A stretch of 64,000 nt of DNA from Octopus sinensis (GCF_006345805.1 NC_043014.1:27404001-27468000); one strand, 5' to 3'; positions 8,700 through 59,559 are shown, counted from the first letter of the stretch. Translations and numbers: made by a program. The notes: generated by a model not told the origin, from the letters alone.

Positions 8700-9518
8700 T
8701 TTCGCTTTATCTTCTTTCAATTCCTGTTCTCTTCGAATAAAATTTTTACGGATACAACTGCTTACAAAAATAGGAATTAATGTATAATTTCTTTCTATGT
8801 TCATAATTTTTTGCTTACAATACTGGGAATAATATGCCACCAAAGAAAAGATGTAATCTCTCCAGAAACAAATATAAAGCAAGGAAGATTGTAGAAAACC
8901 GAAGGCGAGAGTCTGAAGAGAGAAGCTAGATGAGATTTTCTCAACATCAGCAAATGCATGTTGCAGCATTTAATGCTGGATCATTAAATCAATGTTTTAA
9001 TGATTAGACAGAGGTCCAGTAGAATAGCTCTCAGAAACAGACTACGTACAAATTCGTTCTTCACAACTCCTGAAGCTATTTTCAGATATGATTCATCCCA
9101 TTTTTATAAAAATAATAACTCTGTCCAAATTAGTGTGCTAAACACAAAGTGTCTTTTCTGTAGAACTTTCAAATTTTCAAATGAAACAGGCGGTCAGGTA
9201 AGATTGACAGCACTACCAGCTCCTTCTCAACCTCTTATGGATCTTCTAGAAAGCATTTCAATAAAGTCAAAGGATTTTCTGAACAATATCAGACAATACA
9301 ACTCTGCAAATAACATCGTTTGGTGCATCTAAGAAGATAGATAAACATGAATTTATGACGACGTCAAAGTTCAAGAGCAAGTCTATCACTTTATTTACTC
9401 CACAAATGTTTTGTTGTCAGTGCTGCACTTTCTCATATCAGCTGTTTCAACATAACTGTAATATATTATATACAAACTATGCCATTTTAATCCCGAGCAA
9501 CGCCGGGTGTCTCTGCTA

Positions 9519-19754: not shown

Positions 19755-20014
19755 ATAGAGAAATGTTTTTGTTTCACTTTTAACACGTAATATTGAAATA
19801 GTGGAGAAGGTATGATATTGGTGTGGGCTCGCCCTAGGCAAGAAGTTAAATATTTGTTTTGCCCATGACACTACATGGACTCTAAATAAGGCATGTGTAA
19901 AATTTGAATAAAATTGGTTGTGTAGTTCTCAAGTTTTGGGGATTCACACAGACAGACAGACAGACACACACACACACACACACACACATACTTTCTCAGT
20001 TTTTTATATATAGA
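19755..20014 (-). mobile_element. Non-autonomous Helitron-like 5' part
   Basis: Minus strand begins A|TCTATATATAAAAAACTGAG followed by (TG)n/(TCTG)n, as in the Helitron 5' ends at 33119 and 34208. Confidence 0.5.
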
Positions 20015-36374: not shown

Positions 36375-38605
36375 TGATTCAGCCCGAAGGCTGCGCCCAT
36401 GCTGGGGCACCACCATTGAATGAGCTACACTAGTATGTGGCACTTGATCAACAAGGGAGTTCGATGCCGCTGCCCGCATCTGTGTTTCCTGCCGAGAGGT
36501 AGGTTCATCTGGGACCCCCGACAAGAAGAGATCCAGTTTAGTTTTAAAGAAACTCACATCCACACCATGCAGGTCTCTCAGGCATTTAGGGAGGATGTTG
36601 AAGAGATGTGGTCCTCTGAAACCCAAGCTGTTGCAGTATCTGGTCCCGTATTGTGATGGTGATGTTGGAATCTTTGACACCATGCAGTGGCGCCCCGTTC
36701 TGCAGTTGGGGTAACTTTGAATGCCAAAGTTTGGAATAAGACCCTCCAGGATTTTCCAGATGTATATCACTGCATATCTCTTTCGCCTTCGCTCCAGGGA
36801 GAAGAGTTTTAATACTTTCAGTCTTTCCCAGTAGCTGATATGTTGTATTGAGACGATCTTCTTAGTGTAACTTCGTTGAATTGCTTCGAGTTCTGCTGTT
36901 AGCTTTATATTGTGTGGTGACCATAGTTGGGAGCAGTAGTCCAAGCGGCTGAGAACGAATGTTTTTCAAAGGACCATCAGTGTCTCCTTCTCTCTTGTTC
37001 TGAAAGTTCGGAGAATCCATCCAGCTATCCGTCTGCATTTTATCACCAAATTAGTAATATGCTCTTGGAAAGATGCATCATTACTCATGTCAATGCCCAG
37101 GTTACGCACTGATTTTGACTCGGGGATTGCGATTCTTCCCGGGCCAGTGTATCCAGTTTGCATGTCGTTTACCTTTGTGTGCCGGTAGCGCAGAGCCTGG
37201 AACTTCCCTGCATTAAACTGCATGTTGTTGTCCTCAACCCACCTGTATATTGTATCCAACTCCCGTTGCAGATGTCCAATATTTCCAGGGTTTTGTATTT
37301 TGTGGGAGACTTTTGTGTCATCTGCATAGCTAGCAAGGGTGGCTATCTTAGCAACAGGGGGCATGTCTGAAAGGGTCACTATGAGCAGCAGTGGCCCCAA
37401 GACAGTGCCCTGTGGAACACCGCTTGTTATTTGTGTTTCCTTGGAGGTGGCTCCATTGGCCATAACTGCCTGCCTTCTATCTTTTAGGAAGTTGTGCATC
37501 CACTCTCCAAGTTTTCCGCCTATGCCGAGACCACGCAGTTTGTGACAAATCATACCGTGGTCGACTTTATCAAAGGCTTTTGCAAAGTCGAGATATATCA
37601 CATCCACATTTGAGCCATTTAGTAGCTGTTTTAACACTCAGTCATAGTGTTTCAGGAGCTGTGTCAGGCAGCTTCTACCTAGTCAAAATCCATGCTGGGT
37701 GTCAGTTAGCAAGTCATTTTCTTCATGATTAGTTTTTTGCGGACTATTCGTTCCATGACTTGGCTGATGTGTGAGGTCAGAGAGATAGGTCTATAATTTT
37801 TAGCATCTGCTCTGCTTCCTCCCTTATGGATAGGGCATATTACCCCCTCTTTCAATTTGACTGGGAGCTTACCACTTGCAAGAAAGCTCTGAAAAAGAAG
37901 CTGCAGCAGTTTTGCAAGGGCTCGTTTACACGATTTGAGAAGGATTGCTGGAAATCCAGCAGGTCCAGCAGCTGAGTTTGTGTCAATCTCATCTATGGCC
38001 AGTGAGATATCATCTTCAATGTTGATACACTCAATTTTTGCCTCTTTGGTCACAGGTAAAGTGGCAAAGAATTCTTCTGGGTTGTTTACTTGCCAGTGTC
38101 CTAGAGGTGTAGTGAACACACTTTGAAACTGTTCGTTCAGTATTTCACTTATCCTCGTGGGATTTCCTGTGAGGGAGCCATCTTTTTGGAAGAGAGGTCC
38201 TATTCTCTGGCGCACTGTGGCTGTCTCTTTGGCAAACTTAAAGAAAGCTTTAGGGTTTGACTTGATATTTTCTATTACCCAAGCTTCTTTATCTGCTCTC
38301 TCCTTTTCATGAGACTGATGCAGACTTTTCTCAATTTCCATTAGCATTCTCTCGAGCCGAGACTTCTCACCACTTTTGGTATGCTTGCTCAGGCGGTTCG
38401 CAATCATTGTCCGTCGTCTCATAAGAATCTTCCTTTCTCTCGGGATCCTGTTTTTGTGTGTGCTAGCCCTGCACACTGGGACATATTTGTCACATATGGC
38501 TTGTATTATGGACATGAAACGTTTATGTTTCATGTCAATGTCTGGTGTGGAGAGACATTTGGGCCAATCCTGTTTGAGGATCTCTTTCTCAATCAACTTC
38601 CAATT
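36375..38605 (-). mobile_element. CR1-like LINE ORF2 (RT region), 5'-truncated, disrupted
   Basis: ORFs 37706-38596 (NYRPISLTSH), 36966-37637 (YLDFAKAFDKVDH, GVPQGTVLGP, YADDTK) and 36369-36944. Confidence 0.93.
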
Positions 38606-45258: not shown

Positions 45259-46329
45259 GTATGTATGTATGTATGTATACAAAGTCCGCTGAAAAAATGT
45301 ATATACACTTAAGGATAGGACCAATCTGTATAAATATTTTAATTCAGTGTTATCCGAATTTGATAAAACATCGAAAGAGTATTTATATTTATATCGACAC
45401 TAAAACCGATAAACCTGTGCTTTGAAACAAAAGCACCCTGTGCTATCTGTTTCAGAGCCAACTTAACAAAACAATGCCCTTGATTCCTGCTAACACAATA
45501 ACAGCATACATAGATTAACATTGGACTCCTTTGACCTTTAGGGACCCCCGAGTGACTACCTAAAGCACTCATTTTTTAAGATACCACTGACCTACTTCAC
45601 TCGAATACAGTAAAACCCATTGCAAACCCATAAACAATAGCACTAATGTTCACGAAATATCATAAGATAATGTTTTAAAAAAATAAATAAACATGAGACT
45701 GATTGCGTGATCGCACGAATAGTATTTTGCTATTGTTCTCACCCAAACACGTGAAGATAGTTAAACATAACTTTCTCAAAAACTCGGTCTCCTGTAATGA
45801 AACGACATTGAATTAATGAAGTGTCAAATTTTTTGTGCAAGAAAACGTGCCGCTATATTTTAGAATTGTCAATAGAAAATGACATGTGCAACAAGGAACT
45901 TTAGATGTGGTCTCTGGACCAACTAGAAATAGAAACCTAATCTCCCTCCATTCATATTCTGCCGTAAAAAAAATTAAAAAAGAAGGCGGGGATTCCTTGA
46001 TCATTTACATAAGGAACGATGATCACATTTAAGGTGCCTATGACTATGGGTCTTTGATCAATGCATACACAAACACACACACACACACACACACAAACAA
46101 ACTACTGGAACCAATAGGAATATTTCATGTTCTGCTAGAAATAGAAGCCAAATCTCTTACATATAACATTCAACTGTCGATTCAAAAGTGACAAGGTATT
46201 GATTGTAGATATTAAATTAAATTTTTTTACATTTTTCAAACGTTTACACCTTCATATAACGGTCTACCTCCCTTCTAAATGATTACATATTCATATTTCA
46301 ATTTATGTATATGTATGTATTTATATGTA

Positions 46330-46605
46330 GAGGCACATGGCCAAGTGGATTGTGCAGCGGTCGAAGGATCGCGGGTTCGAATCTCAGACCGGGCGATGTG
46401 TGTGTTTATGCGCGAAACACCTAAGCTCCACGCGGCGAACTTCTGCTGACTCTTTCGCCACAACTTTTTCTCACTTTTTCCTCCTGCATCTTGCAGCTCA
46501 CCTGTGACGGACCGGCGTCCCGTCCAGCTGGGGAACCTATACGCCAAGGAAAGCAGGAAACCGGCCTTATGAGCCAGGCGTGGCTCGAGAAGGAATAAAC
46601 AACAA
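46330..46605 (+). mobile_element. tRNA-derived SINE
   Basis: A-box-like TGGCCAAGTGG, B-box GGTTCGAATC, tail GAAGGAATAAACAACAA. Confidence 0.75.
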
Positions 46606-46707
46606 TGTATTTATATATGTATTTACAAATGCGTGTGCGTGCGCCCCCATGCGTGTATGTTGTCTGTTAGAGGATGGTAGGGCTTCGTTCCCCCTGCTAG
46701 CAATATA

Positions 46708-46886
46708 TCAGATTGCGTAAAAAGTAAGCAACGTTTTAAACCATAAAAAATTTGTACCGGATTTTTTGCAGAGTTTTGAATTTTTTTTAAACATTCTTTT
46801 GCAATTGTCTGATAAAACAGACATAGACTTGCTCAAATGCATCTATAAATTAACACTGATATTTTTTCACTGTTGTTCCAATCATC
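46708..46886 (+). mobile_element. Mariner 5' TIR and 5' UTR, separated from its transposase by 7.3 kb of inserted retroelements
   Basis: TA then TCAGATTGCGTAAAAAGTAAGCAACG (mariner-TIR-like); ends in TGTTCCAATCATC, which joins to TGAAATG of the transposase at 54211. Confidence 0.65.
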
Positions 46887-48749
46887 TTTTTTGAAGCTGA
46901 GTTGTTGAAGTTGAGTTATTGAAGTCGAGTTATAATTGTGAGTAGAACGTGAATTTATTGTTCATTATTGTTGTTGTTAATACCGTTGTTAATATCGCTA
47001 AAATTTTGTGGAGTTGATTTTTTTCCATTGAGGAAAATGGAGAAGGCGCCAGCGGGCGGCCACAGCTATGCAGCCACAACTAGAAGAGGAGCAGAGAAAG
47101 AAGCATTGGAAACTTTTGAAATAAAGGTCGAGCCCAGGAAGATGAAGGCTAGCAAGAAGCTACTGAAAAAGGAAGGCGACAAGATAAAGTTGACGCTACC
47201 CAAGGAACTAATGAACAGCGTTATGAAGAAGACAGTGACATACAAGACCATGAAGGTTGCTACAGGAAATATCGAGATAGCAGCTGTGGAGGAGATTGAG
47301 AAGGTGTTGGAAAGTATGAAAAACGCGATCACCTTCAGAGCAAGAGGCAGAAAATATGCCACTGTGGACATGCGTTTCACATCAGAAGAGGAAGCGATAA
47401 GGCATGCGACGGAGGCAATCCGCTCAGAAGAATGGATTCTTCTGCCATCCTATTGCGGCAAACGTATGGCGAGAGTTCGGGTAGGCCAGGTGCCCCGGAG
47501 CTGGAGGAGGCATGGCTAATGACGGCCATTATGTATAACATGGAAGAAGAGGCCAGAATACTGGAGGCCACCAGAACAAATAAATTGGACTACTGAGGCT
47601 ATGGGTTGGAGTTAACAATCCAGGCAACAGTGGAAGACCTGAACAGAATAACAGAGGAGATAGTGTTACCTGAAGGTTGAGGGAAGACCACCTGTGTGTT
47701 ACGAATGTGGCGAAAAGGGACCCATGAAGGCGAGATGCCCACAAAAAGAACAGAGAGAGACTAAAGAAAATATCGAACATGCAGTGACAGTCGAGAATAA
47801 TGAGAGAGCAGCGGAAGAAGAATTCACGCTAGTGGAAAGAAAAAGAAGGAGGAGCGGTAGGGTAATCCCGCCACCGACTAATCAAAAAAAGAAGAAAGAA
47901 GAGGTGGAAAAGAAAGAGGTAACGAGAAAGAAAGATGATAAAAGTGAGACGGAAAAGGAAAGTGAACAAATAATTAAGGTGTGTGACAAGGAGGCAGAGG
48001 AGGAAGCAAGTATGAAGATGACAGATGAATTGACGGAAGACTTAGGAACTCAACTACAAGAGGATGAGATAGAGAAGCTGTTTACAGTGGAGACGGAGAA
48101 AGAGAAGGTACCAGACTCAGAGAAGAGTATAGAGGAATCTATAATAGGAAGGGTAGTGGAGGAATAAAGGAGAAAGCCGAGAGGAGGGAGGAACAAAAGG
48201 AATTTTGTGACCTATTCTAAGAACAAAGAGGTGGAGAAAAAAATCGCAAAGTTCAAGCACATCATAAGGGTAAAGTTACCTAACGACGTGTACCCAGAGA
48301 GTGTGAAGGCCATTGTGGTCGATAGGGAAACCTATAAGAAACTTAGAGACATGTACGGGAGTAGAATTGACCCAGCTGGAGCGTTGGTGGAGTTCAATGA
48401 GCTGCCACCAGTAATCGATTTGTTAGAACTGGAGCCGTATATGAGACGTTAAAAGGGAGAAAAAAAAGGGAAAAAAAGGAAAATTACTTTGTTTTTGAAG
48501 AAAAGGAAAAGGTTTTTAGAAAACAACGATAATTAAGGAAAGAAAAAAAACAACAGATAGTGACAAGACTGTGTACAAACGTTCAAATGGTACTGCATGA
48601 GGAGTGGGGCCCATGCGGCCATTTCATCTTTCATTATTATATAATATTCATACTCATTCGTTTTATGTTTTTTGCCCCCACTGTGGTGTTGTGTCTGTCC
48701 TTGTAATGTCCCATCTGTGTTAGTAGCCTGAGTGCCAAAATAAAGAAAA
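46887..48749 (+). mobile_element. Tx1/L1-like ORF1-only element A (HAL1-like)
   Basis: ORF1 from ATG 47037 (RGRKYATVDMRF..EEEA...LLPSYCGKR), zinc knuckle CYECGEKGPMKARC, Glu/Lys-rich linker, small C-terminal ORF 48207-48452, AATAAA; no APE or RT sequence. Confidence 0.8.
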
Positions 48750-48762
48750 TGTCCCAATCATC

Positions 48763-50545
48763 TTTTCGAAGAGATTGTATGGTTCAGAGTTGATTTTGTA
48801 TCGTTGCGGATAGGTTGTCCCTAGTTGAAAGTACTCCTTAGCGGGGTTATCTGTTGTTGGTAATAGTTTAACTTGTATCGTTTGCTTTTGTGGTGTAAAC
48901 ATTTTTCAAATGTTTACACCTTCATATAACGGTCTACCCTCCTTCTAAATGATTACATATTTATATTACAATTTATGTATATGTATGCAAGCGCGTGCCG
49001 GGAGCTACGCTTCAGTAGCAGGCAGAGATAATACTGCAGCGACTGTGAGACAGCTGGAAATCAGGGAAGTGCCAGTCGACTTCGAAATAGTGAGAAACAG
49101 CAAAAAATTGATACAAAGAGAAGGGTTAAGATTAAAATTGACGCCGCCGGAAGAGATATCAAGAAGCAAAAACGAAAAGCAGTAGTCTACAAAACCCTTT
49201 CACTGGCAAGTAAGAAAATAGAAATGGCGAACGAAGAAGATTTGGAAGAATGCTTGAAAGAGATAAGTAACATTGAATTCTACTGTAGAGGAAGGAAATT
49301 TGGTACAATGGAGGTGCGCTTCCCGACTGTGGAAGCACTCCACTGTAACCTTGAAAACGGAAAAATGGGTAGCGGGAATGAGGATTGGCAGGGTGCTCAA
49401 GAGATCAACGAGTTGTGACTCTTTGCAGCCATCCTAATAGACACAAAGGACGACCCTCAAATGCTGAGATGAGCCGTACTAAACAGCTGAACTGATGGGG
49501 ATATGGCCTAGAAGGCATAATCTAGGCCACCACACTAGACCTACAAGAAATAACAGAAGAAATAGAGTTATCAGAAGAGATGAAGCTGCGTGTGGTAGTG
49601 GAAGGAAAACCTCCCACATGCTACCACTGCAGAGAGAAGGGCCATATTAAGGCAAATTGCCCCCTTCTTAACCAAACATCAATGGAGGTGAGACAAGAGG
49701 AAAGTAGCAGGGACGATAATCTGAATGAAGGTAGATACCGAGAACAGAGATGAAGTCCAAGAAATACAGAGCAGGAAGAGGAAAGACATTAAAATCTCCC
49801 CACCCCCAAAGAACTCTAAAAAAAAAGATAAAAGAAAGAACTAAGTGACACACAAACGCCCACACAGCATTACACATTACAACAAACACACAAGAATATC
49901 GCAGACAGCCCAGAATCCCCAACTAAATATACACAACCACGAACATACAGCCCAGTAACTCCAGTAAAATATTCACAAGCACTCACAGACGATCCAGAAA
50001 CACAGGCAGTACAGATTCTCCAGTTGAATACACACAAGCAGACACACAAGAAACACAGAACAATTACAAATATAGGGCGTATTTAACACACTATTGGACG
50101 AATTCATCTATCGAGGAAAAATCGGAAAGATGAAGTCAGTGATAAGAGTTACAGAGGAGGACAACATACGAGTTCCAGGTATGGAATGTATATTGATAGA
50201 CATTAAAAACTATAAAAAGTTAAAGGCAAGCTTTGGTGACGACGTAAACCCATTAGGGTTGGAGGTAAGGTATGACTATCTGCCACTAGCGGTGGAATTT
50301 GAAAAGTTGAAAGCACATTTTATTTACTAAAATAATTAATTTGATAAACGTAGGCTTTAAAAAATAGAGGAAAAATATAGTTAAAATGGTACTACTCGGA
50401 AGTGGGTCGAGTAGCCATTACATCTTCATATTTATATAAATTCATTTCATCCATCCGTTTATGTTCTTTGTCCCCACTTGTGCTGTCTTGTCTGTCTTTG
50501 TTCGTCCCTTCTGTGTAAGGCCATATTGGCCAATAAAATTAAATA
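48763..50545 (+). mobile_element. Tx1/L1-like ORF1-only element B (HAL1-like), degenerate
   Basis: RGRKFGTMEVRFPTVE, zinc knuckle CYHCREKGHIKANC at about 49618-49660, C-terminal ORF 50094-50330 homologous to that of A, AATAAA; no APE or RT. Confidence 0.78.
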
Positions 50546-50558
50546 TGTTCCGATCATT

Positions 50559-53500
50559 TGGACCGACTTGTTCGTGAATGTTGTTTGTGGCGTTCGAAAA
50601 GTTTGGCGTAAGTTGTAATATTCGTGTTTAATTGTTGAATTTGCACTGTTGAATTACTACGTTGTTGAACTTTTGTTGAGTGTTTTATAAACACCTATTT
50701 TTCTGCTTGTGGCAGTCCTTTGTCAACGTTTACCCCTTGTGTGAAGGGAGAAAATATTGTTATATTTTTCAAAAAAAAATGGAAAAATCACCTATCAAAG
50801 CCAGGACCAGTAGTGAACCTGGTACAAGTGAATGGAAAGGTATCAGAAGCAGAGAAGGCAGCACAGTTTTAAATAGCATGCCGACAGAAGAGTTTATTCA
50901 AGAAAGAAAAGCTAGCAATTTTACAACAGCGACCGGTGTTTCAAAAAAGACAACAAAATGTGGAAGCGATGAACTCGGAAAATCCAAAGGTATTATGAAA
51001 AGGGAGGGGAGCGAAACAGTGATTACTCCTCCCACGCATAAGGCACTGCGGCACACCGTGATATACAAATCATTTGTGACCAAAGCAAAAAATAAACTGG
51101 ATAATGCAAGTAAAGAGACGGTGGAACTGTGCCTCTGTTCAGTTTGGAACTACGTAGCATACGTCACAAGAGGAGTGAAATATACCACAATAGAAGTCCG
51201 TTTCAAAACCGAGGAAAAGGCAAAACAAGCGTCGACTACACCGTTAAAAACGGTGGAAGTGGTGCTCCTACCTGCTTATCTTGGAAAAGAGACTTCCAAG
51301 ATTAAGGTAGGAGACATCATCCTATCCGAAATAGCCCCCGCTTGGCTGGTGACAGCCATAATAAACGGCTTGGAGGATAAGATCATAATTCTTCAAGCTT
51401 CAGCGCTGGAAATGCAGAATTGGCAGCGGCAAGGCCACTTATACAAGTGGGGAAGACTAAGCTGCAACTCACGGTGGAGGGGAGGAAGCCTCGTTGCTAC
51501 AAGTGTGGTCAAAAAGGCCACATTAGGGCCGAGTGCCAACCTTCCCCCGAAAAACAAACAGAAGCTGCAGGTGAAACCCATGAAGAAACTTCTGAAAATG
51601 AAACAGCGGAAGAGGAGATGGGGGGAAGCCCAAGAAGAAAAGTGAGAGATTTTCTCCAGGTAAAAAAGAAGACCCTCCCCCTCCAACCCCACTAGCCCTA
51701 CAACAAAACAAAAAACAACAAACAGAACACACAACTACAAAAAAATCCCCTTCCCAAAATGTTCTCCACCCATCTAGACATGGATTATACTGCGGTAGTG
51801 ACGACTAGCAAGTCACTACTGCAGCAATTAAAAGACAAGCTCAATGCGGCCAACATAACCAAAGACTACAAGGGGAAAAGCATCCCCCAAAACATTGCAA
51901 TTTATAAGATAGACAGAGCTTGTTGGCAAATCGAATTAAAAATGAAATAGGCCCTCTGGGGAAAAACTAATGTTTGAGGGTCTAGTCAACGACACCTCGC
52001 AAGACCTGGACGATAAACAAAAGGAATGAAATGGACGTGCCACCCTATCTCAAACTGTAAGTATAACCATTGTGGATATTCTTAATGTAGGGTGTTTGAA
52101 TGTACGAGGCCTGGAGCCAGAATGGAAACAAGGTCGTTTCCTTAATGACCTCAGGTCGCATAGAATGGACATTATAGTTGCCACAGAGTCCAGATTGAGT
52201 AGTCAAAGAGACATTCCCCCTCCTAAATAGCTACGACAAAATTATTTCTCCATGCCTACCTGGAGGAGGGAGAGGCGTCGCTGTGCTGCTCAGGGAAAAC
52301 CTGGATTTAGAGACAAGAACTATCTTCATCGACCCGGAAGGCAGTTTGGTCATTCTTGGCGTGACACTAAGCAGCGGTAAGGTATTCAGGCTTGTAGCTG
52401 TCTGCGCTCCCTCGGGAACTGGACAATCTGATATCTTTCGAGGTCTGGAGAAGTTTCTTGGGACATCTCACACTATAGTAATGTTAGGTGACTTTAACTA
52501 ATCTGCGATGCACGCGTAGATTCGTTAGCTCGTCTACTGACAGGAGGGGGAACCCGTGCTTCAATAAGTTGCTCAGTCGATTTCAGCTGGCAGATAGGTA
52601 CAGATTAGATGTCCCAGACGCTCCATTGTGGACTTGGATTTATAGTGATGGTCATCTACATATTTAAACAGGATTCTAATTAGGGAAATAGACAAAAACC
52701 TAGTTAGTCGTCCACAATTTCACTATGTCAGCTACAGTGATCACAAATTTGTGACTTGTACGCTGGACTTAGATAAGTCATGGCACTATAAGGTTTTTGA
52801 TGAATAATCAAGGGAACTTGGTAAACGAACCCGAGGAGCTATGTAAGGTCTTTCAGGTGTTAGCAAAAAGGTTGGCTTGTGTCGTGGGTGGAATCGTCGG
52901 AGAGGCACACATTTATGCGGTTAAAATGCTAAGGGTTTGGTTTGGTCTAGATCTCCAGATAGAGAAGAATTGGAACGAGGTGACGAGCAGGGTGACCCAC
53001 CTAACTCAGACCTGGTCTGAGCGGCGGCTATTCCTGAAAGGAAGGGCGGAGGTCGGAGGAGTGTTTATCACTTCTGTGATTACCTACCGCCTAACCGTCG
53101 TGCTTTGCCTCCGTTCGTTGCTGATCAATTTGGAGCGGCTGCTCTTCCGTTTTTTGTGGAGGGGTAGAAGTCCTTTTGTAAAGCGCTCTGTCTGCCTTGA
53201 CTGTTGATGCGCAGACATGCTCTGAGGCTGAGGCATCTGTGGCTCTACCTAGATGATGAACAGGTGTGGTCTCCGTTCGTTCGGTCGTTACTTCCTGAGT
53301 TTACTAGTTTGAGTGAACTAGGACCTTGAATCAAGTGAAGACCAAAGTTGGGTGCTTGGCAAGCGGAGTGTCGTGAAGCACTCAAGCTTCTCTGTAACAC
53401 GAGCAACGCCAACGGCGAGGGTTCCACCTCGACTTTCCATAGAGGGTTGGTAGAGGCTCAGTGTAACTTCCAAGGATCCCTGGCTTGGTAGTGTTACCGA

Positions 53501-54197
53501 GGAGTCTTACCAGTTCACAATAAATTCGCAGGGCATGGTGCCCGTTGCGCACCCACGTGGCCAAGATGCGAGCAGGACAGGGAAACCGTTCTGCACGCGA
53601 TTGTGCAATGCCCCAAAATTTCCGAAATGTGGTTCTACATTGAACACCTGCTATCACGACTGGGAAGAGTACAACTGTTTTCTGAGTCGATTATAAAGAT
53701 TGTTCCTCCTTCCTCTTTTAACAAAGAAGGCAAGGCTTGTTTTCTTGCTGTGGTCGCTTGTAGCGAAAGAAGGGGTTTGAAAGACCTGTGTGAAATGTAT
53801 CATGACAGACATCTTCATTTCCAACCTTGAACTGGTTAATTTCCTCATTTACCACCTTCAGAGGAAAATAAGGGTGGAGAGAAAATACCTGTCATCTGAT
53901 GTATATGGGAAAAGAGGGAAGGCTGTAACGTGTTTGTTGAGAATGAATGAACCCGCATAGTATACCCATGAGGTTATACAAAAGATTACAGTGGTGGAAC
54001 GGGGCTTGCGGGGTCGAAGCGAAACCCCTCCTCCACTTAATAGTATGTGTTATTGTTTGTCATCATCCGATTTATATAAATTCTTAACTTGAATTTCTAA
54101 CTATTCATCTTTTGTAAAATCATTCGTTTATCGACCCCTCCCTCATTTGTATCGTCACCACTATGTTTGGCCCCCTTGTGAGCAATAAAGAAGTAGC
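50559..54197 (+). mobile_element. Tx1/L1-like LINE C: ORF1 plus multiply deleted ORF2
   Basis: ORF1 from ATG 50779 (RGVKYTTIEVRFKTEE...LLPAYLGK; CYKCGQKGHIRAEC); APE start ILNVGCLNVRGL at about 52075 and GDFN; RT largely deleted; C-terminal CARCEQDRETVLHAIVQC; AATAAA at 54184. Confidence 0.88.
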
Positions 54198-54210
54198 TGT
54201 TTCGATCATC

Positions 54211-55215
54211 TGAAATGAAACTGTCAAAGCGCGATATTTGAGCAATTTTGCTATTCAACTTCAAAAAAGGACGTAAAGCAGCTGAAACTGCTCGCGATAT
54301 CAACGAAAAGTTTGGTGAGGAAATGACCAGTGAGTGGTCAACTCGAAAAATGGCTTAAACGATTTCGCAGTGGAGACCTGAGCCTTGAAGATCGGGAGCA
54401 TAGTGGACGCCCATTTATCATTGAATACAGTCAATTGAAGGCCGTAATTGAGAAAGATCCACGTAAAACCACTCGAGAACTAGCAAAAAGAACTTCAAGT
54501 TAGCCAGAAAACTGCCTGTAATCAGTTGCATACGATCGGAAAATAAAAGAAGCTCGGCAAATGAGTACCACATGATTTGAATGAAAATCAGAAAATGCGC
54601 AGATATGAAATTTGCTCGTCGTTTCTTCTCCGTAACCAGACCGATCCATTTCTCGATCATATTGTAACTTGCAATGAAAAGTGGATTCTTCACAGTGAGT
54701 GGAACAAGATGAGACACCGAAAACCCTCCCTAAACCTGAGCCCTTCATAAAAAAAAAGGTAATGGTGACTGTTTGGTGGTGTACTGCAAGACTCATCCAC
54801 TATAACCTCTTAAAACCTGAAAAAAAAATCATTACTGTAGAAACATTGCCATGAAATTGCCAAAATGAATGAAAAATTGCTACTTGTCTGTCCCAGACTG
54901 GTCAACAGAAGAGGGCCAATCATTCTTCATGACAATGCTCGACTACACGTTTCACTAATGATGCTCCAGAAGTTGAGGGAACTTGGCTACGAAGTTCTTC
55001 CCCGCCCAGCTTACTCCCCAGACCTTTCTCCTGCCGATTACCACTTTTTCAAGCACCTTGATGGTTTCCTGCGAGAAAAGGAGTTCAAAATTCAAACCAA
55101 TGCTGAAAAGAGTTCATCAGCTCCAGAACTCCAGATTTTTATGCTACCGGAATAAACAAACTTGTAACAACAAAAATGTGTTGATTCTAATGATACTTAC
55201 TTTGATGTATAAAAC
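54211..55215 (+). mobile_element. Mariner (Hsmar1/SETMAR-like) transposase pseudogene
   Basis: ATG 54215 MKLSKRDI*AILLFNFKKGRKAAETARDIN; IVTCNEKW, LHDNARLH, YSPDLSPADYHFF; 3' TIR not found. Confidence 0.93.
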
Positions 55216-55234
55216 TTCCGCATTGAGATGCGCC

Positions 55235-55672
55235 GACGTAATGGTTTCCCTTCATGACAGAATTAATAATCAAGACTATTTAAGCATTTTATCTGATCAA
55301 ATTCATCCTAAGGTTACGGAACTGTTTCCGGAGGGAAACGCAATCTTTCCGGATGATAATGTACCAATTCCCACAGCTAAAGTTGTTACTGAATGGCACG
55401 AAGAACATTCTAGTGAAATTGAACATTTTATCTAGCCACGACAGTCCCCAGAGCTCAATATTATTGAACATTTATGATGCATTTTAGAAAAACAAGTAAG
55501 GAGTCGATATCCTCCACCATCATCATTAAAAGAACTAGCGACTGTTTTAGCTGAAAAATGGACAAAAATTCCTTTGGAAACAATTCAAACTCAGGCTGTA
55601 ACTACTGCCAAAGGCGGTCATAAATTTGTCGGAAATTTTCAGGTGTTTCCATTATTTTGTCCAGCTCCTGTA
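55235..55672 (+). mobile_element. Tc1-like transposase 3' fragment
   Basis: DQIHPKVTELFPEGNAIFPDDNVPIPT...SPELNIIEHL; ends in TIR-like CCATTATTTTGTCCAGCTCCTG|TA. Confidence 0.85.
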
Positions 55673-55681
55673 TATATATAC

Positions 55682-55725
<44 letters not shown>

Positions 55726-55729
55726 TCTT

Positions 55730-56220
<491 letters not shown>

Positions 56221-57799: not shown

Positions 57800-59150
57800 G
57801 TGTATGTTTTTACAACATTTACCATTATTGGAAAACTGTATTCCAAGTGAAAATTTGTTCTCATTGTGAGAAATATAGTTTAGTGACTATCCTGCCACCA
57901 AAAGTCGTTCGCAGTTTGTAAATAGTGTGTATTTTACAACTACGTTGAAAAGCTGTATTCAAGTGGTGCAGTCCAAGTTCTAATTGGAGTACCATAAGGG
58001 CTTGGAGTACATGAATGCCCAGAAGATTTTTTTGCTGTGTTTTTTTTAACTATTGTTTTCTTCTTCTATTGTGACTTTTTTATTGAACTGTTTTTTTCTT
58101 TCTTCTTCCCTTTTGTTTTCTTTTGAATTCTCTCCTTTTTTATGAACTATTGTTTTGGACATGACAAAAAAAGATAAGATTGTAGAGTGGAAGATTGTCC
58201 CACCTAAGGAGTGGCTCAGACAGCAAGAGGAGAGAACGGTGGTGATGAGAACGTATTCGAAGGTTCCCGACACCATTACCGTCTTCTCCAAGCAGATGAT
58301 TGAGCAGGAGTTGGCAGAATATCTGCCAACCATTAAGTATATCTCTAGGGGAGTCAAACATGCAACGGTGTGGTTGCTGTTTGACACCCCAGAGGAGGCT
58401 CGCAGTTTTGCGTGCCAGCCCGTTGAGGGTAAAGAAATTTTGTTTCCTCCCACTTATTGTGGGAAAAATTGACGAGAGCCTGGGTCTGTGGTTTGCCACC
58501 CGGAATTGAACCCCAGTGGATAGAGGATACACTCAGTCGGGGTCTGGGTGGCAGTGGAGCCAGGCTCCTCAATGTGAAAATTCTTCCTGTGGCTGATCGG
58601 GTTGGGTCAAAAGCTTTTTTGACCCTGTGGACCCAATCAGCCATGAATCTGGTTGTGCCAGATTTTTTGAAAATGGCCAGGTTCAGGTACCCGCTGATTC
58701 TTGAGGGTCTCCTCCCCCCACCACTACTACCAAGTGTCATCGGTGCCTGGAGCCTGGCCATATAAGGAAGAACTGTTCTCGGGAGCAAGGCGGAGTCCTG
58801 GAGCAGTCAATTGAGACCTCTGTAAAAGAGGGAACGAATGCGGCTGAAGAGACAGAGGACTCCTCAGGAAAGGGCCGCAAGAGGAAGAAGGTGAGCAACA
58901 ATGGGTGTTCACCAAAAGATCCTGGGAATGAAGAAAGGGAGGTGAATCTTCCGGTCACGGAGGAAATGCACCCTCCCTCAGTTGAGAGGGAAAAGGAGGA
59001 GAAACTGGACATTGCCGGCAGTCGGTGACATAGCACCGGAATGTCCCGGAACCTTGCCGATAGGGGTTGTGCCACCGACAGGGGAAGAGACACCGTTTGG
59101 GGGACTGTGTTGCCAACGGTTAAATTGACTACCTCGAACCCGGAGGAAGA
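57800..59150 (+). mobile_element. Tx1/L1-like ORF1 fragment D, cut by assembly gap
   Basis: 58155-58472 RGVKHATVWLLFDTPEEA...LFPPTYCGK; zinc knuckle CHRCLEPGHIRKNC at about 58735-58780. Confidence 0.8.
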
Positions 59151-59250
59151 NNNNNNNNNNNNNNNNNNNNNNNNNNNNNNNNNNNNNNNNNNNNNNNNNN
59201 NNNNNNNNNNNNNNNNNNNNNNNNNNNNNNNNNNNNNNNNNNNNNNNNNN
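59151..59250. other. Assembly gap (100 N)
   Basis: Run of N. Confidence 1.
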
Positions 59251-59559
59251 TTTAAACCCACAGTCAAGGGAGTAACTGTGCCTACAGAGGCCACCCTTAA
59301 ACTGGAAGCAGTCGATTAAGAGTAAGGTAGGTGGAGTACATGTGCACTAAGAGGGCACAGAAAAAAGGAACATGGTAAAACAGTTGTTGAAAAAATACAA
59401 TGCATGTATGCATAAGGAAAAACATTCAGCAAAGAAAGGTGTCCAGTCAAATAGAACAAAGTATATATATACAATGATACAGAAAGAGAGAAAATATGAA
59501 TGCAGTGTCTATAACAACATAAGTCTATTCTCCGGAACAGTCACTGGCAAATCAAAGTT

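What the first reader, a model, noticed from the sequence alone, without database searches (positions are those of the whole stretch)
46874..54217. Three different Tx1-like retroelements stacked at one site in a mariner 5' UTR: apparent transposon-targeting retrotransposon system
Seen in sequence: a mariner is split between its TIR/5' UTR (46708-46886) and its transposase ATG (54215). The 7.3-kb interruption is three divergent, same-orientation Tx1/L1-like elements (A 46887-48749, B 48763-50545, C 50559-54197). All four junctions carry one 13-bp motif: TGTTCCAATCATC (46874), TGTCCCAATCATC (48750), TGTTCCGATCATT (50546), TGTTTCGATCATC (54198). Each downstream copy follows an AATAAA and short A-rich tail. 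Removing the array leaves ...ATCATC|TGAAATG, 4 bp before the start codon. Established: Tx1-clade LINEs include sequence-specific families, and Xenopus Tx1L/Tx2L insert into DNA transposons. Inference: the motif is a target-site duplication regenerated at each insertion, so autonomous and ORF1-only relatives share an endonuclease targeting this mariner site and separate the transposase from its promoter. I do not know whether this family is described.
Basis: partly seen in the sequence, partly recalled or inferred. Interest (0 to 1): 0.9.

Follow-up and report, generated by a model that had tools for sequence, protein, structure and literature searches.

The report
Retrotransposon stack inside an octopus mariner
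Three unrelated-looking copies of L1/Tx1-type retrotransposons have each landed at exactly the same 13-base site just upstream of a mariner transposon's start codon in what is probably an octopus genome. This is a new example of a known habit: site-specific retrotransposons that target other transposons.

Summary
A decayed mariner is split between its 5' end (46708-46886) and its transposase ATG (54215) by three same-strand L1/Tx1-type elements. The junctions carry four copies of one 13-mer, consensus TGTTCCGATCATC.

A and B encode only ORF1. C has ORF1, an AP-endonuclease and the ORF2 C-terminus but has lost its reverse-transcriptase core, so none is autonomous.

A-like copies from Octopus bimaculoides and O. 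sinensis end at the same nucleotide (…GCCAAATAAAGAAA) and are followed by other sequences. The 13-mer is therefore target DNA, not an element terminus.

One of those loci holds a second stack of at least four elements in the same A-A-B-C order. It has a different 13-mer (GTTGAGCAGCAGT) and sits inside a TTAA-flanked TIR transposon. Both stacks begin 30-33 nt downstream of a TATAAA box.

The window's 13-mer matches the published crocodilian Tx1-Mar duplication in Mariner-N4_AMi at 10 of 13 positions, and the Keno U2 target at 9 of 13.

The best reading is sequence-specific insertion of Tx1-type LINEs and their ORF1-only dependants into DNA transposons. The kind is known (Tx1L/Tx1D, Tx1-Mar); an octopus case was not found in the searchable literature. 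No second copy of this mariner could be examined, and Tx1-clade placement was not tested by phylogeny.

The parts
46706..46707 (.). TA dinucleotide flanking the mariner 5' end (mariner-type target duplication, 5' copy only)
   Evidence: Read directly. It precedes the TIR that aligns with L004/L006.
46708..46873 (+). Mariner 5' terminal inverted repeat and 5' UTR, up to the insertion site
   Evidence: TCAGATTGCGTAAAAAGTAAGCAACGTTTT aligns terminally with the TIRs of the complete 1284-1285-bp mariners L004/L006. The UTR length fits: ATG at element position 183 here against 189 there.
46844..46850 (+). TATAAAT box in the mariner 5' UTR, 30 nt upstream of the first 13-mer
   Evidence: Read directly. 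Only 0.6% of random window positions have TATAAA at this spacing. The L013 stack has TATAAA 33 nt upstream of its first 13-mer.
46874..46886 (+). 13-mer copy 1, TGTTCCAATCATC (target site or duplication)
46887..48749 (+). Element A: an ORF1-only Tx1-type retroelement. 5' UTR with 14-bp tandem repeats at 46891-46933; decayed ORF1 at 47037-48452; 3' UTR with a stem-loop at about 48585-48624; AATAAA and a short tail.
   Evidence: About 70% nt identity to ORF1-only copies in O. bimaculoides and O. sinensis.
48750..48762 (+). 13-mer copy 2, TGTCCCAATCATC
48763..50545 (+). Element B: a second, heavily decayed ORF1-only element. ORF1 lies at about 48995-50330, with a foreign 89-bp repeat at 48899-48987. 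The 3' UTR stem-loop is at about 50384-50420.
   Evidence: About 66% nt identity to the third element of the L013 stack.
50546..50558 (+). 13-mer copy 3, TGTTCCGATCATT
50559..54197 (+). Element C: ORF1 (50779-51950, CCHC), AP-endonuclease (52060-52804), RT remnant with the core deleted (about 52880-52920), ORF2 C-terminal domain (to about 53960) and 3' UTR. Many frameshifts and stops.
   Evidence: Pfam zf-CCHC 3e-5, Exo_endo_phos 3.5e-10, zf-RVT 4.5e-4. Alignment to P0121-P0126 shows the RT deletion. tblastn with P0123 finds only residues 513-904.
54198..54210 (+). 13-mer copy 4, TGTTTCGATCATC, contiguous with the mariner start region
54211..55213 (+). Remainder of the mariner: TGAA, then the decayed transposase ORF from the ATG at 54215. 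No 3' TIR is found; the element abuts a Tc1-like fragment.
   Evidence: HTH_48 1.3e-14, Transposase_1 3.6e-6. About 50% aa identity to Hsmar1/SETMAR-type mariners.

Best explanation
The stack records at least three separate target-primed reverse-transcription events by sequence-specific L1/Tx1-type retrotransposons at one site in the 5' UTR of a mariner, probably in an Octopus genome.

Proposed mechanism (inferred): an AP-type endonuclease of the C lineage nicks the bottom strand immediately 5' of TGTTCCGATCATC and the top strand 13 nt downstream. Each insertion therefore regenerates the 13-mer on both sides and leaves the site reusable. A and B are HAL1-like derivatives that encode only ORF1. 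They keep a conserved 3' UTR stem-loop and end, and are presumably mobilised in trans by an ORF2-bearing partner. C is itself an RT-deleted derivative of such a partner.

All elements point the same way as the mariner. They start about 30 nt downstream of its TATAAAT box, roughly at the expected transcription start. They are thus placed to be transcribed from the mariner promoter while cutting the transposase ORF off from it.

What is shown: the anatomy, the target-derived nature of the 13-mer, the independent origin of A, B and C, and a second, analogous stack in another DNA transposon.

What is inferred: the nick positions, trans-mobilisation, use of the promoter, and a family-wide preference for this mariner.
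For: - The four 13-mers sit exactly at the four junctions, n+1 copies for n elements.
- A, B and C are too divergent to be duplicates of one another: no blastn similarity and 27-34% ORF1 identity.
- The 3' UTRs of A, B and A-like copies from O. sinensis (L012) and O. bimaculoides (L013, two copies) align at 76% mean column identity up to ...GCCAAATAAAGAAA. After that each locus differs: TGTYCCRATCAT, CGAGTTGTGTAG, GTTGAGCAGCAGT. The 13-mer is therefore flank.
- L013 holds a second same-strand stack of at least four elements. Its own 13-mer occurs 5 times against 0.14 expected. The stack lies between 261-nt inverted arms of a TTAA-flanked element.
- The stacks start 30 and 33 nt downstream of TATAAA; the background rate for that spacing is 0.6%.
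- The window 13-mer matches the crocodilian Tx1-Mar/SINEU duplication AGGTTCCCATCAGCAT at 10/13 positions and Keno's U2 3' target TCTGTTCTTATCAGTTTAAT at 9/13, with the 3' junction within 1-2 nt of the same register. Random window 13-mers reach both scores at a frequency of 1.1e-4 (PMC4494074, PMC6136364).
- The ORF1-only structure is a family property, seen in L011, L012 and L013.
- The 3' UTR stem-loop has 3 compensatory pairs.
- The endonuclease and a relative's RT are nearest to L1 proteins in the PDB.
- Tandem insertions sandwiching a duplication are described for Tx1-Mar/SINEU.
Against: - Only one copy of this mariner family was available. There is no other copy in the window, in three other octopus loci or in metagenome scans. 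I could not count filled against empty sites.
- The five A-like relatives I could examine lie elsewhere. They are only about 70% identical to A, so they are not the same family.
- No intact autonomous member was found. The nearest ORF2 relatives are 43-49% identical and come from unidentified hosts. Two of them, L001 and L009, have 3' flanks starting ATCAT... but not the full 13-mer.
- The L013 target bears no resemblance to the Keno or Tx1-Mar motif. The motif similarity therefore applies to one lineage only, and I noticed it after the fact.
- There is no phylogeny with named Tx1 references.
Confidence: 0.7

Rival explanations
1. Element-directed stacking. The first insertion was essentially untargeted. 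Later elements were drawn to the resident element's junction, for example by recognising element ends or through read-through RNA pairing with the old duplication. On this view the mariner is incidental.
For: A-like relatives occur at several unrelated sites. Stacks with different 13-mers exist, so one stacking rule would cover both. The polyadenylation signal sits 5-10 nt before each element end, so transcripts probably run into the downstream 13-mer and could guide re-insertion (inference).
Against: The 5' ends of A/B (TTTTYGAAG) and C (TGGACCGAC) differ, as does the mariner sequence after copy 4, so no shared element-derived context surrounds the four sites. Both stacks lie in DNA transposons, 30-33 nt after a TATAAA box, which is unlikely for two random first hits. 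The 13-mer resembles published Tx1-Mar and Keno targets.
Confidence: 0.13
2. The A-B-C array is a composite unit that arose once and spread as a block, by read-through retrotransposition or by segmental or unequal-crossover duplication, rather than by three hits at this locus.
For: Both stacks have the same order of element types, A-(A)-B-C. Unequal exchange between 13-mers could add or remove units.
Against: All internal junctions in each stack carry that stack's own 13-mer, identical to its outer flanks. A block moved to a new kind of site would keep the old internal 13-mers. The two stacks' counterparts are only 66-72% identical. Matching order has a chance probability of about 1/12, which is not compelling.
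Confidence: 0.08
3. The 13-mer is part of the elements' own conserved termini, or the arrangement is an assembly artefact.
For: The related contigs L001 and L009 have ATCAT directly after their 3' ends, so part of the motif could be element-borne. There is an assembly gap elsewhere in the window at 59151-59251.
Against: There are n+1 copies, with the first contiguous with the mariner UTR and the last with the mariner ATG. A-like copies end at the same base with other flanks. There are no Ns and no repeat collapse within 46700-55300. The three elements are unlike each other, so mis-joining of repeats is unlikely.
Confidence: 0.04

Closest known systems
Tx1-Mar families and SINEU in crocodilians, targeting Mariner-N4_AMi (Kojima 2015, PMC4494074)
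   Same: Tx1-type LINEs and non-autonomous dependants insert preferentially at a fixed site in a mariner. Tandem insertions sandwich a duplication. The duplication AGGTTCCCATCAGCAT shares 10 of 13 positions with the 13-mer here, in nearly the same register.
   Different: The host is a probable cephalopod, not a reptile. The dependants are ORF1-only LINE derivatives, not snRNA-headed SINEs, and Rfam finds no snRNA in the window. The site is 4 nt before the transposase ATG of a coding mariner, in the same orientation; the main crocodilian site is in the opposite orientation in a non-autonomous mariner. Phylogenetic relatedness was not tested.
Tx1L/Tx1D and Tx2L/Tx2D of Xenopus laevis
   Same: A sequence-specific Tx1-clade LINE sits at one site inside a DNA transposon. 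Tx1D is described as a non-autonomous piggyBac-type element (PMC4494074), and the endonuclease is site-specific in vitro (PMC1950540). The second octopus stack (L013) lies in a TTAA-flanked TIR element, a close parallel.
   Different: The target sequence and host transposon family differ from the window's case. Here several divergent families pile up at one site. The Xenopus papers themselves could not be read.
Keno (U2 snRNA gene-specific Tx1 lineage)
   Same: AP-endonuclease Tx1-type elements with a precise 3' junction. Keno's 3' target TCTGTTCTTATCAGTTTAAT (PMC6136364) shares the core GTTC-NN-ATCA with the 13-mer here. Tx1-Mar co-clusters with Keno in the published RT tree (PMC4494074).
   Different: The target here is a mariner UTR, not U2. 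No U2 sequence was detected in the window.
HAL1 (half-L1) of mammals
   Same: Non-autonomous LINE derivatives that keep only ORF1 plus the UTRs, and that arose repeatedly (PMC5753468). A and B, and their relatives in L011-L013, have exactly this structure.
   Different: They derive from Tx1-type rather than mammalian L1 elements, their ORF1 has a CCHC knuckle, and they share a partner's site-specific insertion.

Membership tests
L1 superfamily / Tx1 clade of non-LTR retrotransposons | N-terminal AP-type endonuclease in ORF2 | tested here: met
   C 52060-52804: Pfam Exo_endo_phos 3.5e-10 over the full profile. The nearest solved structures are human L1 endonuclease chains, E about 2e-5.
L1 superfamily / Tx1 clade of non-LTR retrotransposons | L1-type reverse transcriptase followed by a cysteine-rich C-terminal domain | tested here: inconclusive
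   The RT core is deleted in C. The zf-RVT hit is 4.5e-4, below Pfam's cutoff. The relative P0123, 47% identical to C's C-terminal half, has RVT_1 plus zf-RVT and matches L1 ORF2p at 3e-50 against R2 at 1e-24.
L1 superfamily / Tx1 clade of non-LTR retrotransposons | ORF1 with an RRM-like domain and a CCHC knuckle | tested here: met
   zf-CCHC 3e-5 in C. CxxCxxxGHxxxxC and the RG.KY.T.E.RF block align in A, B, C and D. The RRM fold itself was not tested.
L1 superfamily / Tx1 clade of non-LTR retrotransposons | RT or APE phylogeny groups it with Tx1L rather than L1 proper | not tested
   No named Tx1 reference sequences were reachable with these tools. Octopus repeat annotations list 'L1-Tx1' families (PMC13282606, PMC8967140), but that does not classify these copies.
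Tx1-Mar / Keno lineage | Preferential insertion at a fixed site of a mariner family | tested here: inconclusive
   Three independent elements lie at one site of one mariner copy. No other copy of the mariner was available for a census.
Tx1-Mar / Keno lineage | Target motif related to AGGTTCCCATCAGCAT or the U2 sequence TGTTCTTATCAGT | tested here: met
   10/13 and 9/13 matches. The joint frequency among random window 13-mers is 1.1e-4. This was a post hoc comparison.
Tx1-Mar / Keno lineage | RT clusters with Keno and Tx1-Mar | not testable with these tools
HAL1-like ORF1-only non-autonomous LINE | Encodes ORF1 only, followed directly by the LINE 3' UTR, as a multi-copy family | tested here: met
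   In A and B, 215-300 nt separate the ORF1 stop from the element end. The same contiguous ORF1-3'UTR structure is seen in L011, L012 and two L013 copies from two Octopus species.
mariner (Tc1/mariner superfamily, Hsmar1/cecropia-like) | Mos1-type HTH plus DDE transposase, about 30-bp TIRs, TA duplication | tested here: met
   HTH_48 1.3e-14 and Transposase_1. About 50% aa identity to SETMAR-type mariners. The 5' TIR aligns with L004/L006 and is preceded by TA. The 3' TIR is missing because the element is truncated near 55213, and the catalytic triad was not checked.

The most novel reading that the evidence does not exclude
Octopus genomes may carry paralogous three-part 'systems'. Each would consist of one ORF2-bearing Tx1-type element and two ORF1-only dependants (types A and B) that have co-diverged. 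Each system would be aimed at the transcription start, about +1 after a TATA box, of a different DNA transposon family: a mariner here and a TTAA-type element in L013. Landing there would hijack the host transposon's promoter while disabling it. The mariner-aimed system would also retain an ancient endonuclease specificity (GTTC-NN-ATCA) shared with vertebrate Keno (U2) and crocodilian Tx1-Mar. That would imply a recognition code conserved across bilaterians that repeatedly switches between U2 genes and mariners.
Probability: 0.22. Interest if true: 0.7.

Novelty: new member of a known kind. Interest (0 to 1): 0.5.

Why it matters
Site-specific LINEs are natural examples of RNA-templated insertion at a defined DNA sequence, and few distinct target specificities are known within the AP-endonuclease group.

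This locus adds a candidate 13-bp target, and a second one from L013. The two associated endonucleases are about 53% identical over the aligned part of the domain, which offers a natural pair for mapping specificity determinants.

It also extends transposon-on-transposon parasitism by Tx1-type elements from frogs and crocodilians to a cephalopod. It shows ORF1-only dependants sharing the site. Finally, it suggests the insertion point is chosen at the host transposon's transcription start.

For genome annotation, it explains a class of nested, same-strand LINE arrays in octopus repeats that could be mistaken for single long elements.

Tried and rejected
- **Window self-comparison.** blastn and tblastn of the mariner halves and of A, B and C against the window found no second mariner copy. 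They found one extra Tx1-like ORF1 (D, 58161-59150), which is not in a mariner.
- **ORF2 homologue search.** It gave six relatives at 43-49% identity on short contigs of unknown hosts. Their 3' flanks (ATCATCTTTT in L001; ATCATT(ATT)n in L009) are suggestive but cannot be interpreted. P0125 and P0127 were not on record.
- **Metagenome scans.** The scan with the ORF2 alignment and the scan with the empty-site 20-mer both found nothing.
- **Prokaryotic genome scan.** It found one contaminant contig (L010) carrying a 6549-bp tandem array of a distant relative. Its unit boundaries could not be defined.
- **Mariner search.** It returned only about 50%-identical mariners. Their UTR interiors do not align with the window's, so continuity across the join rests on the TIR, the TA and the UTR length, not on a family consensus.
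- **Rfam.** There were no hits in the window, so there are no snRNA-derived heads of the kind seen in crocodilian Tx1-Mar.
- **Order of insertion.** I tried to infer it from decay. A and C's ORF1 are similarly damaged and B is worse, so no order can be claimed.
- **Insertion aimed at promoters in general.** I considered and set this aside: the L011 copy has no TATA box at the corresponding spacing.
- **Xenopus Tx1L papers.** Not held in the library.

Full report
**1. The observation**

Reading 46400-56000 and pattern searches confirm four + strand copies of one 13-mer:
- 46874 TGTTCCAATCATC
- 48750 TGTCCCAATCATC
- 50546 TGTTCCGATCATT
- 54198 TGTTTCGATCATC

The consensus is TGTTCCGATCATC. Two of the five departures from it are the G-to-A change expected from CpG decay. 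The window contains only two other matches with up to 2 mismatches, neither at an element boundary; about 2.7 are expected by chance. The signal is therefore the placement, not the count. Each copy sits exactly between the end of one unit and the start of the next. The first is contiguous with upstream sequence, and the last with TGAAATG.

**2. The pieces**

Six-frame translation and Pfam show three retroelements on the + strand.

- **A (46887-48749) and B (48763-50545).** Each has a GT-rich 5' UTR, then one decayed ORF with an RRM-like block and a CCHC knuckle plus a shared C-terminal domain. About 215-300 nt of 3' UTR follow, ending in AATAAA and a few bases. Neither has any ORF2.
- **C (50559-54197).** It has ORF1 (zf-CCHC 3e-5), an AP-type endonuclease (Exo_endo_phos 3.5e-10) and the ORF2 C-terminal region (zf-RVT 4.5e-4, below Pfam's cutoff). 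Alignment with the relatives P0121-P0126 and tblastn with P0123 show that about 200 residues of the RT core are missing. C is a deletion derivative, not an autonomous element.

All three are riddled with stops and frameshifts. They share no blastn similarity at E<1e-3, and their ORF1s are 27-34% identical. They are different families, not duplicates.

The endonuclease is nearest to human L1 endonuclease among solved structures (E about 2e-5). The RT of relative P0123 matches L1 ORF2p at 3e-50, against R2 at 1e-24. This places them in the L1 superfamily. I could not test Tx1 against L1 proper with a tree.

**3. The host element**

From 54215 runs a decayed mariner transposase (HTH_48 1.3e-14, Transposase_1). 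It is about 50% identical to Hsmar1/SETMAR-type mariners.

The sequence from 46708 (TCAGATTGCGTAAAAAGTAAGCAACGTTTT) aligns end-to-end with the TIRs of complete 1284-1285-bp mariners fetched for comparison, and it is preceded by TA. Those elements have their ATG at position 189. Here it would be at 183 once 46887-54210 is removed.

The UTR interiors of these distant mariners do not align. Continuity across the join therefore rests on the TIR, the TA and the length, not on a family consensus. The mariner has no 3' TIR. It breaks off near 55213 against a Tc1-like transposase fragment.

**4. Target or element terminus?**

A profile of the four ORF1s in the window retrieved gene models from Octopus bimaculoides and O. 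sinensis, 48-63% identical to A's ORF1. The window is thus probably from an Octopus genome. Three loci could be fetched: L011, L012 and L013. They hold five A-like copies, about 70% nt identity to A, with the same ORF1-only structure. ORF1-only is therefore a family trait, as in mammalian HAL1 (PMC5753468).

The 3' UTRs of A, B and these copies align at 76% mean column identity up to ...GCCAAATAAAGAAA. After that point every locus differs:
- the mariner 13-mer in the window
- CGAGTTGTGTAG in L012
- GTTGAGCAGCAGT in L013

The 5' ends likewise begin TTTTTTGRA after different flanks. The 13-mer is therefore not part of the element.

**5. A second stack**

L013 (O. bimaculoides, CM046610.1) contains at least four same-strand elements: two A-like copies (90.7% identical to each other), one B-like (66% to B) and one C-like with endonuclease and C-terminus. 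Every junction carries GTTGAGCAGCAGT or a close variant. There are 5 matches against 0.14 expected, and none of 100 shuffles reached 5.

The stack lies between 261-nt inverted arms that are 90% complementary. Their termini read TTAA|GGGCATTAC.... This is a non-autonomous TIR transposon with a piggyBac-style TTAA flank. No mariner transposase was found anywhere in L013 by tblastn.

Both stacks therefore lie in DNA transposons. Both have 13-bp junction repeats and the same order of element types. Both begin 30 nt (window, TATAAAT at 46844) or 33 nt (L013, TATAAATA at 9296) after a TATA box. Only 0.6% of random window positions show that spacing.

**6. Comparison with published targets**

Kojima (2015, PMC4494074) described crocodilian Tx1-Mar families and SINEU elements. 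They insert preferentially into Mariner-N4_AMi, often in tandem 'sandwiching a TSD', with the duplication AGGTTCCCATCAGCAT. He found that Tx1-Mar clusters with Keno, the U2-specific Tx1 lineage. Keno's 3' target is quoted as TCTGTTCTTATCAGTTTAAT (PMC6136364).

The 13-mer here matches the crocodilian duplication at 10 of 13 positions and the Keno flank at 9 of 13. The 3' junction falls within 1-2 nt of the same register. Among 200,000 random 13-mers from the window, 6.6e-4 reach the first score, 1.5e-2 the second and 1.1e-4 both.

I made this comparison after the fact, and the L013 target shows no such resemblance. I treat it as a good lead that the C lineage shares the Keno/Tx1-Mar recognition core GTTC-NN-ATCA, not as proof.

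**7. Mechanism**

The most economical account is repeated target-primed reverse transcription at a sequence-specific staggered cut. The bottom strand is cut just 5' of the 13-mer and the top strand 13 nt downstream. This duplicates the 13-mer and keeps the site available.

A and B lack ORF2 and must borrow it. They share a 3' UTR stem-loop with three compensatory pairs between A-type and B-type sequences, and they share a 3' end. This is the sort of signal a stringent LINE RT recognises. C's 3' UTR is less similar, so C's own lineage need not be their partner.

The AATAAA lies 5-10 nt before each element end. Transcripts therefore probably extend into the downstream 13-mer and could pair with the nicked target. 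This behaviour is known from my own knowledge of R1-type elements and was not tested here.

Orientation, and position at roughly +1 of a TATA promoter, suggest transcription from the host transposon's promoter. The physical consequence is that 7.3 kb now separates the mariner promoter from its ATG. These last points are inference.

**8. Limits**

I could examine only one copy of this mariner family. Metagenome scans with the ORF2 profile and with the empty-site 20-mer returned nothing. The closest ORF2 relatives (43-49% identity) sit on short contigs from unidentified hosts.

The A-like copies elsewhere are not in this mariner. They are a different subfamily, so they do not refute specificity. 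They do show that 'the A family' has no single target.

The rival that stacking is directed by resident elements rather than by the mariner sequence remains open at about 0.13. A block-transfer origin is disfavoured, because the internal junctions of each stack match that stack's own outer flanks.

**9. Verdict**

- C is not autonomous.
- Specificity belongs to sublineages.
- The phenomenon is already described in crocodilians and Xenopus.

An octopus or mollusc case, ORF1-only dependants sharing the site, and the promoter-proximal placement were not found in the searchable literature. I rate it a new member of a known kind, of moderate interest.

Noticed in passing
L013:8900-18426 (O. bimaculoides CM046610.1:51452671-51473339): A second same-strand stack of at least four Tx1-type elements (A-like, A-like, B-like, C-like). 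It has its own 13-bp junction repeat, GTTGAGCAGCAGT. It lies inside a TIR element with 261-nt arms and TTAA|GGGCATTAC termini, and starts 33 nt after a TATAAATA box.
   Followed up: yes
window 58161-59150 (+), N gap 59151-59251: A fourth Tx1-like ORF1 (element D, 26-33% aa identity to A and C, with a CCHC knuckle). It is not next to a mariner and runs into an assembly gap, so its ORF2 and 3' junction are unseen.
   Followed up: partly
window 48899-48987 and 46229-46317: An 89-bp segment inside B's 5' UTR is 94% identical to a sequence about 400 bp upstream of the mariner. It is probably a short interspersed repeat that inserted into B and removed its start codon region.
   Followed up: no
window 55220-55680 (+): A Tc1-like transposase C-terminal fragment (DDE_3, 1e-7) directly abuts the truncated 3' end of the mariner. 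The mariner's 3' TIR is absent.
   Followed up: partly
L012:11300-11360 and window 19917-19974: The 3' flank of the O. sinensis A-like copy (GAGTTGTGTAGTTCTCGAGTTTTAGGG..., then (CA)n) is 91% identical to a window segment. That segment is also preceded by an AATAAA-type end of different sequence. Either this is a repeat with a fixed 5' end or it is another recurrent insertion site. The motif resembles the L013 target (GTTG.G.AG).
   Followed up: partly
L010:1-12953 (contig in a MAG labelled uncultured Arenicella sp.): A eukaryotic contaminant contig carries a head-to-tail array, period 6549 bp, of a distant Tx1-type relative (31-38% aa). The units are about 99.8% identical. Unit boundaries and target were not resolved.
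   Followed up: partly
L009:2014-2105 and L001:1766-1781: The nearest ORF2 relatives (about 47% aa) end ...GGCCAATAAAAGAA|ATCATT(ATT)n and ...GGCCAATCAACACACAC|ATCATCTTTT. Both flanks start with ATCAT, the 3' half of the window's 13-mer. L001's last 10 nt equal the window's 13-mer-to-A junction (ATCATC|TTTT).
   Followed up: no
window 46891-46933: A's 5' UTR opens with 3.1 copies of a 14-bp tandem repeat (TTGAAGCTGAGTTA). The 5' UTRs of all these elements are rich in GTTGAG-like motifs that resemble the L013 target sequence.
   Followed up: no
window 37278-38014 (-): A weak reverse-transcriptase match (24-31% aa to P0123) on the minus strand, probably a LINE of another clade.
   Followed up: no
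window 46328-46470 (+): A tRNA-like sequence (…ggttcgaatctc…), typical of a tRNA-derived SINE head, lies just upstream of the mariner. Rfam gave no hit at gathering thresholds.
   Followed up: no
window stack and L013 stack: Both ORF2-bearing elements (C, and the last L013 element) lack the RT core, with different deletion boundaries. Both stacks are ordered A-type, B-type, C-type from 5' to 3'. This is unexplained; the chance of a matching order is about 1/12.
   Followed up: partly
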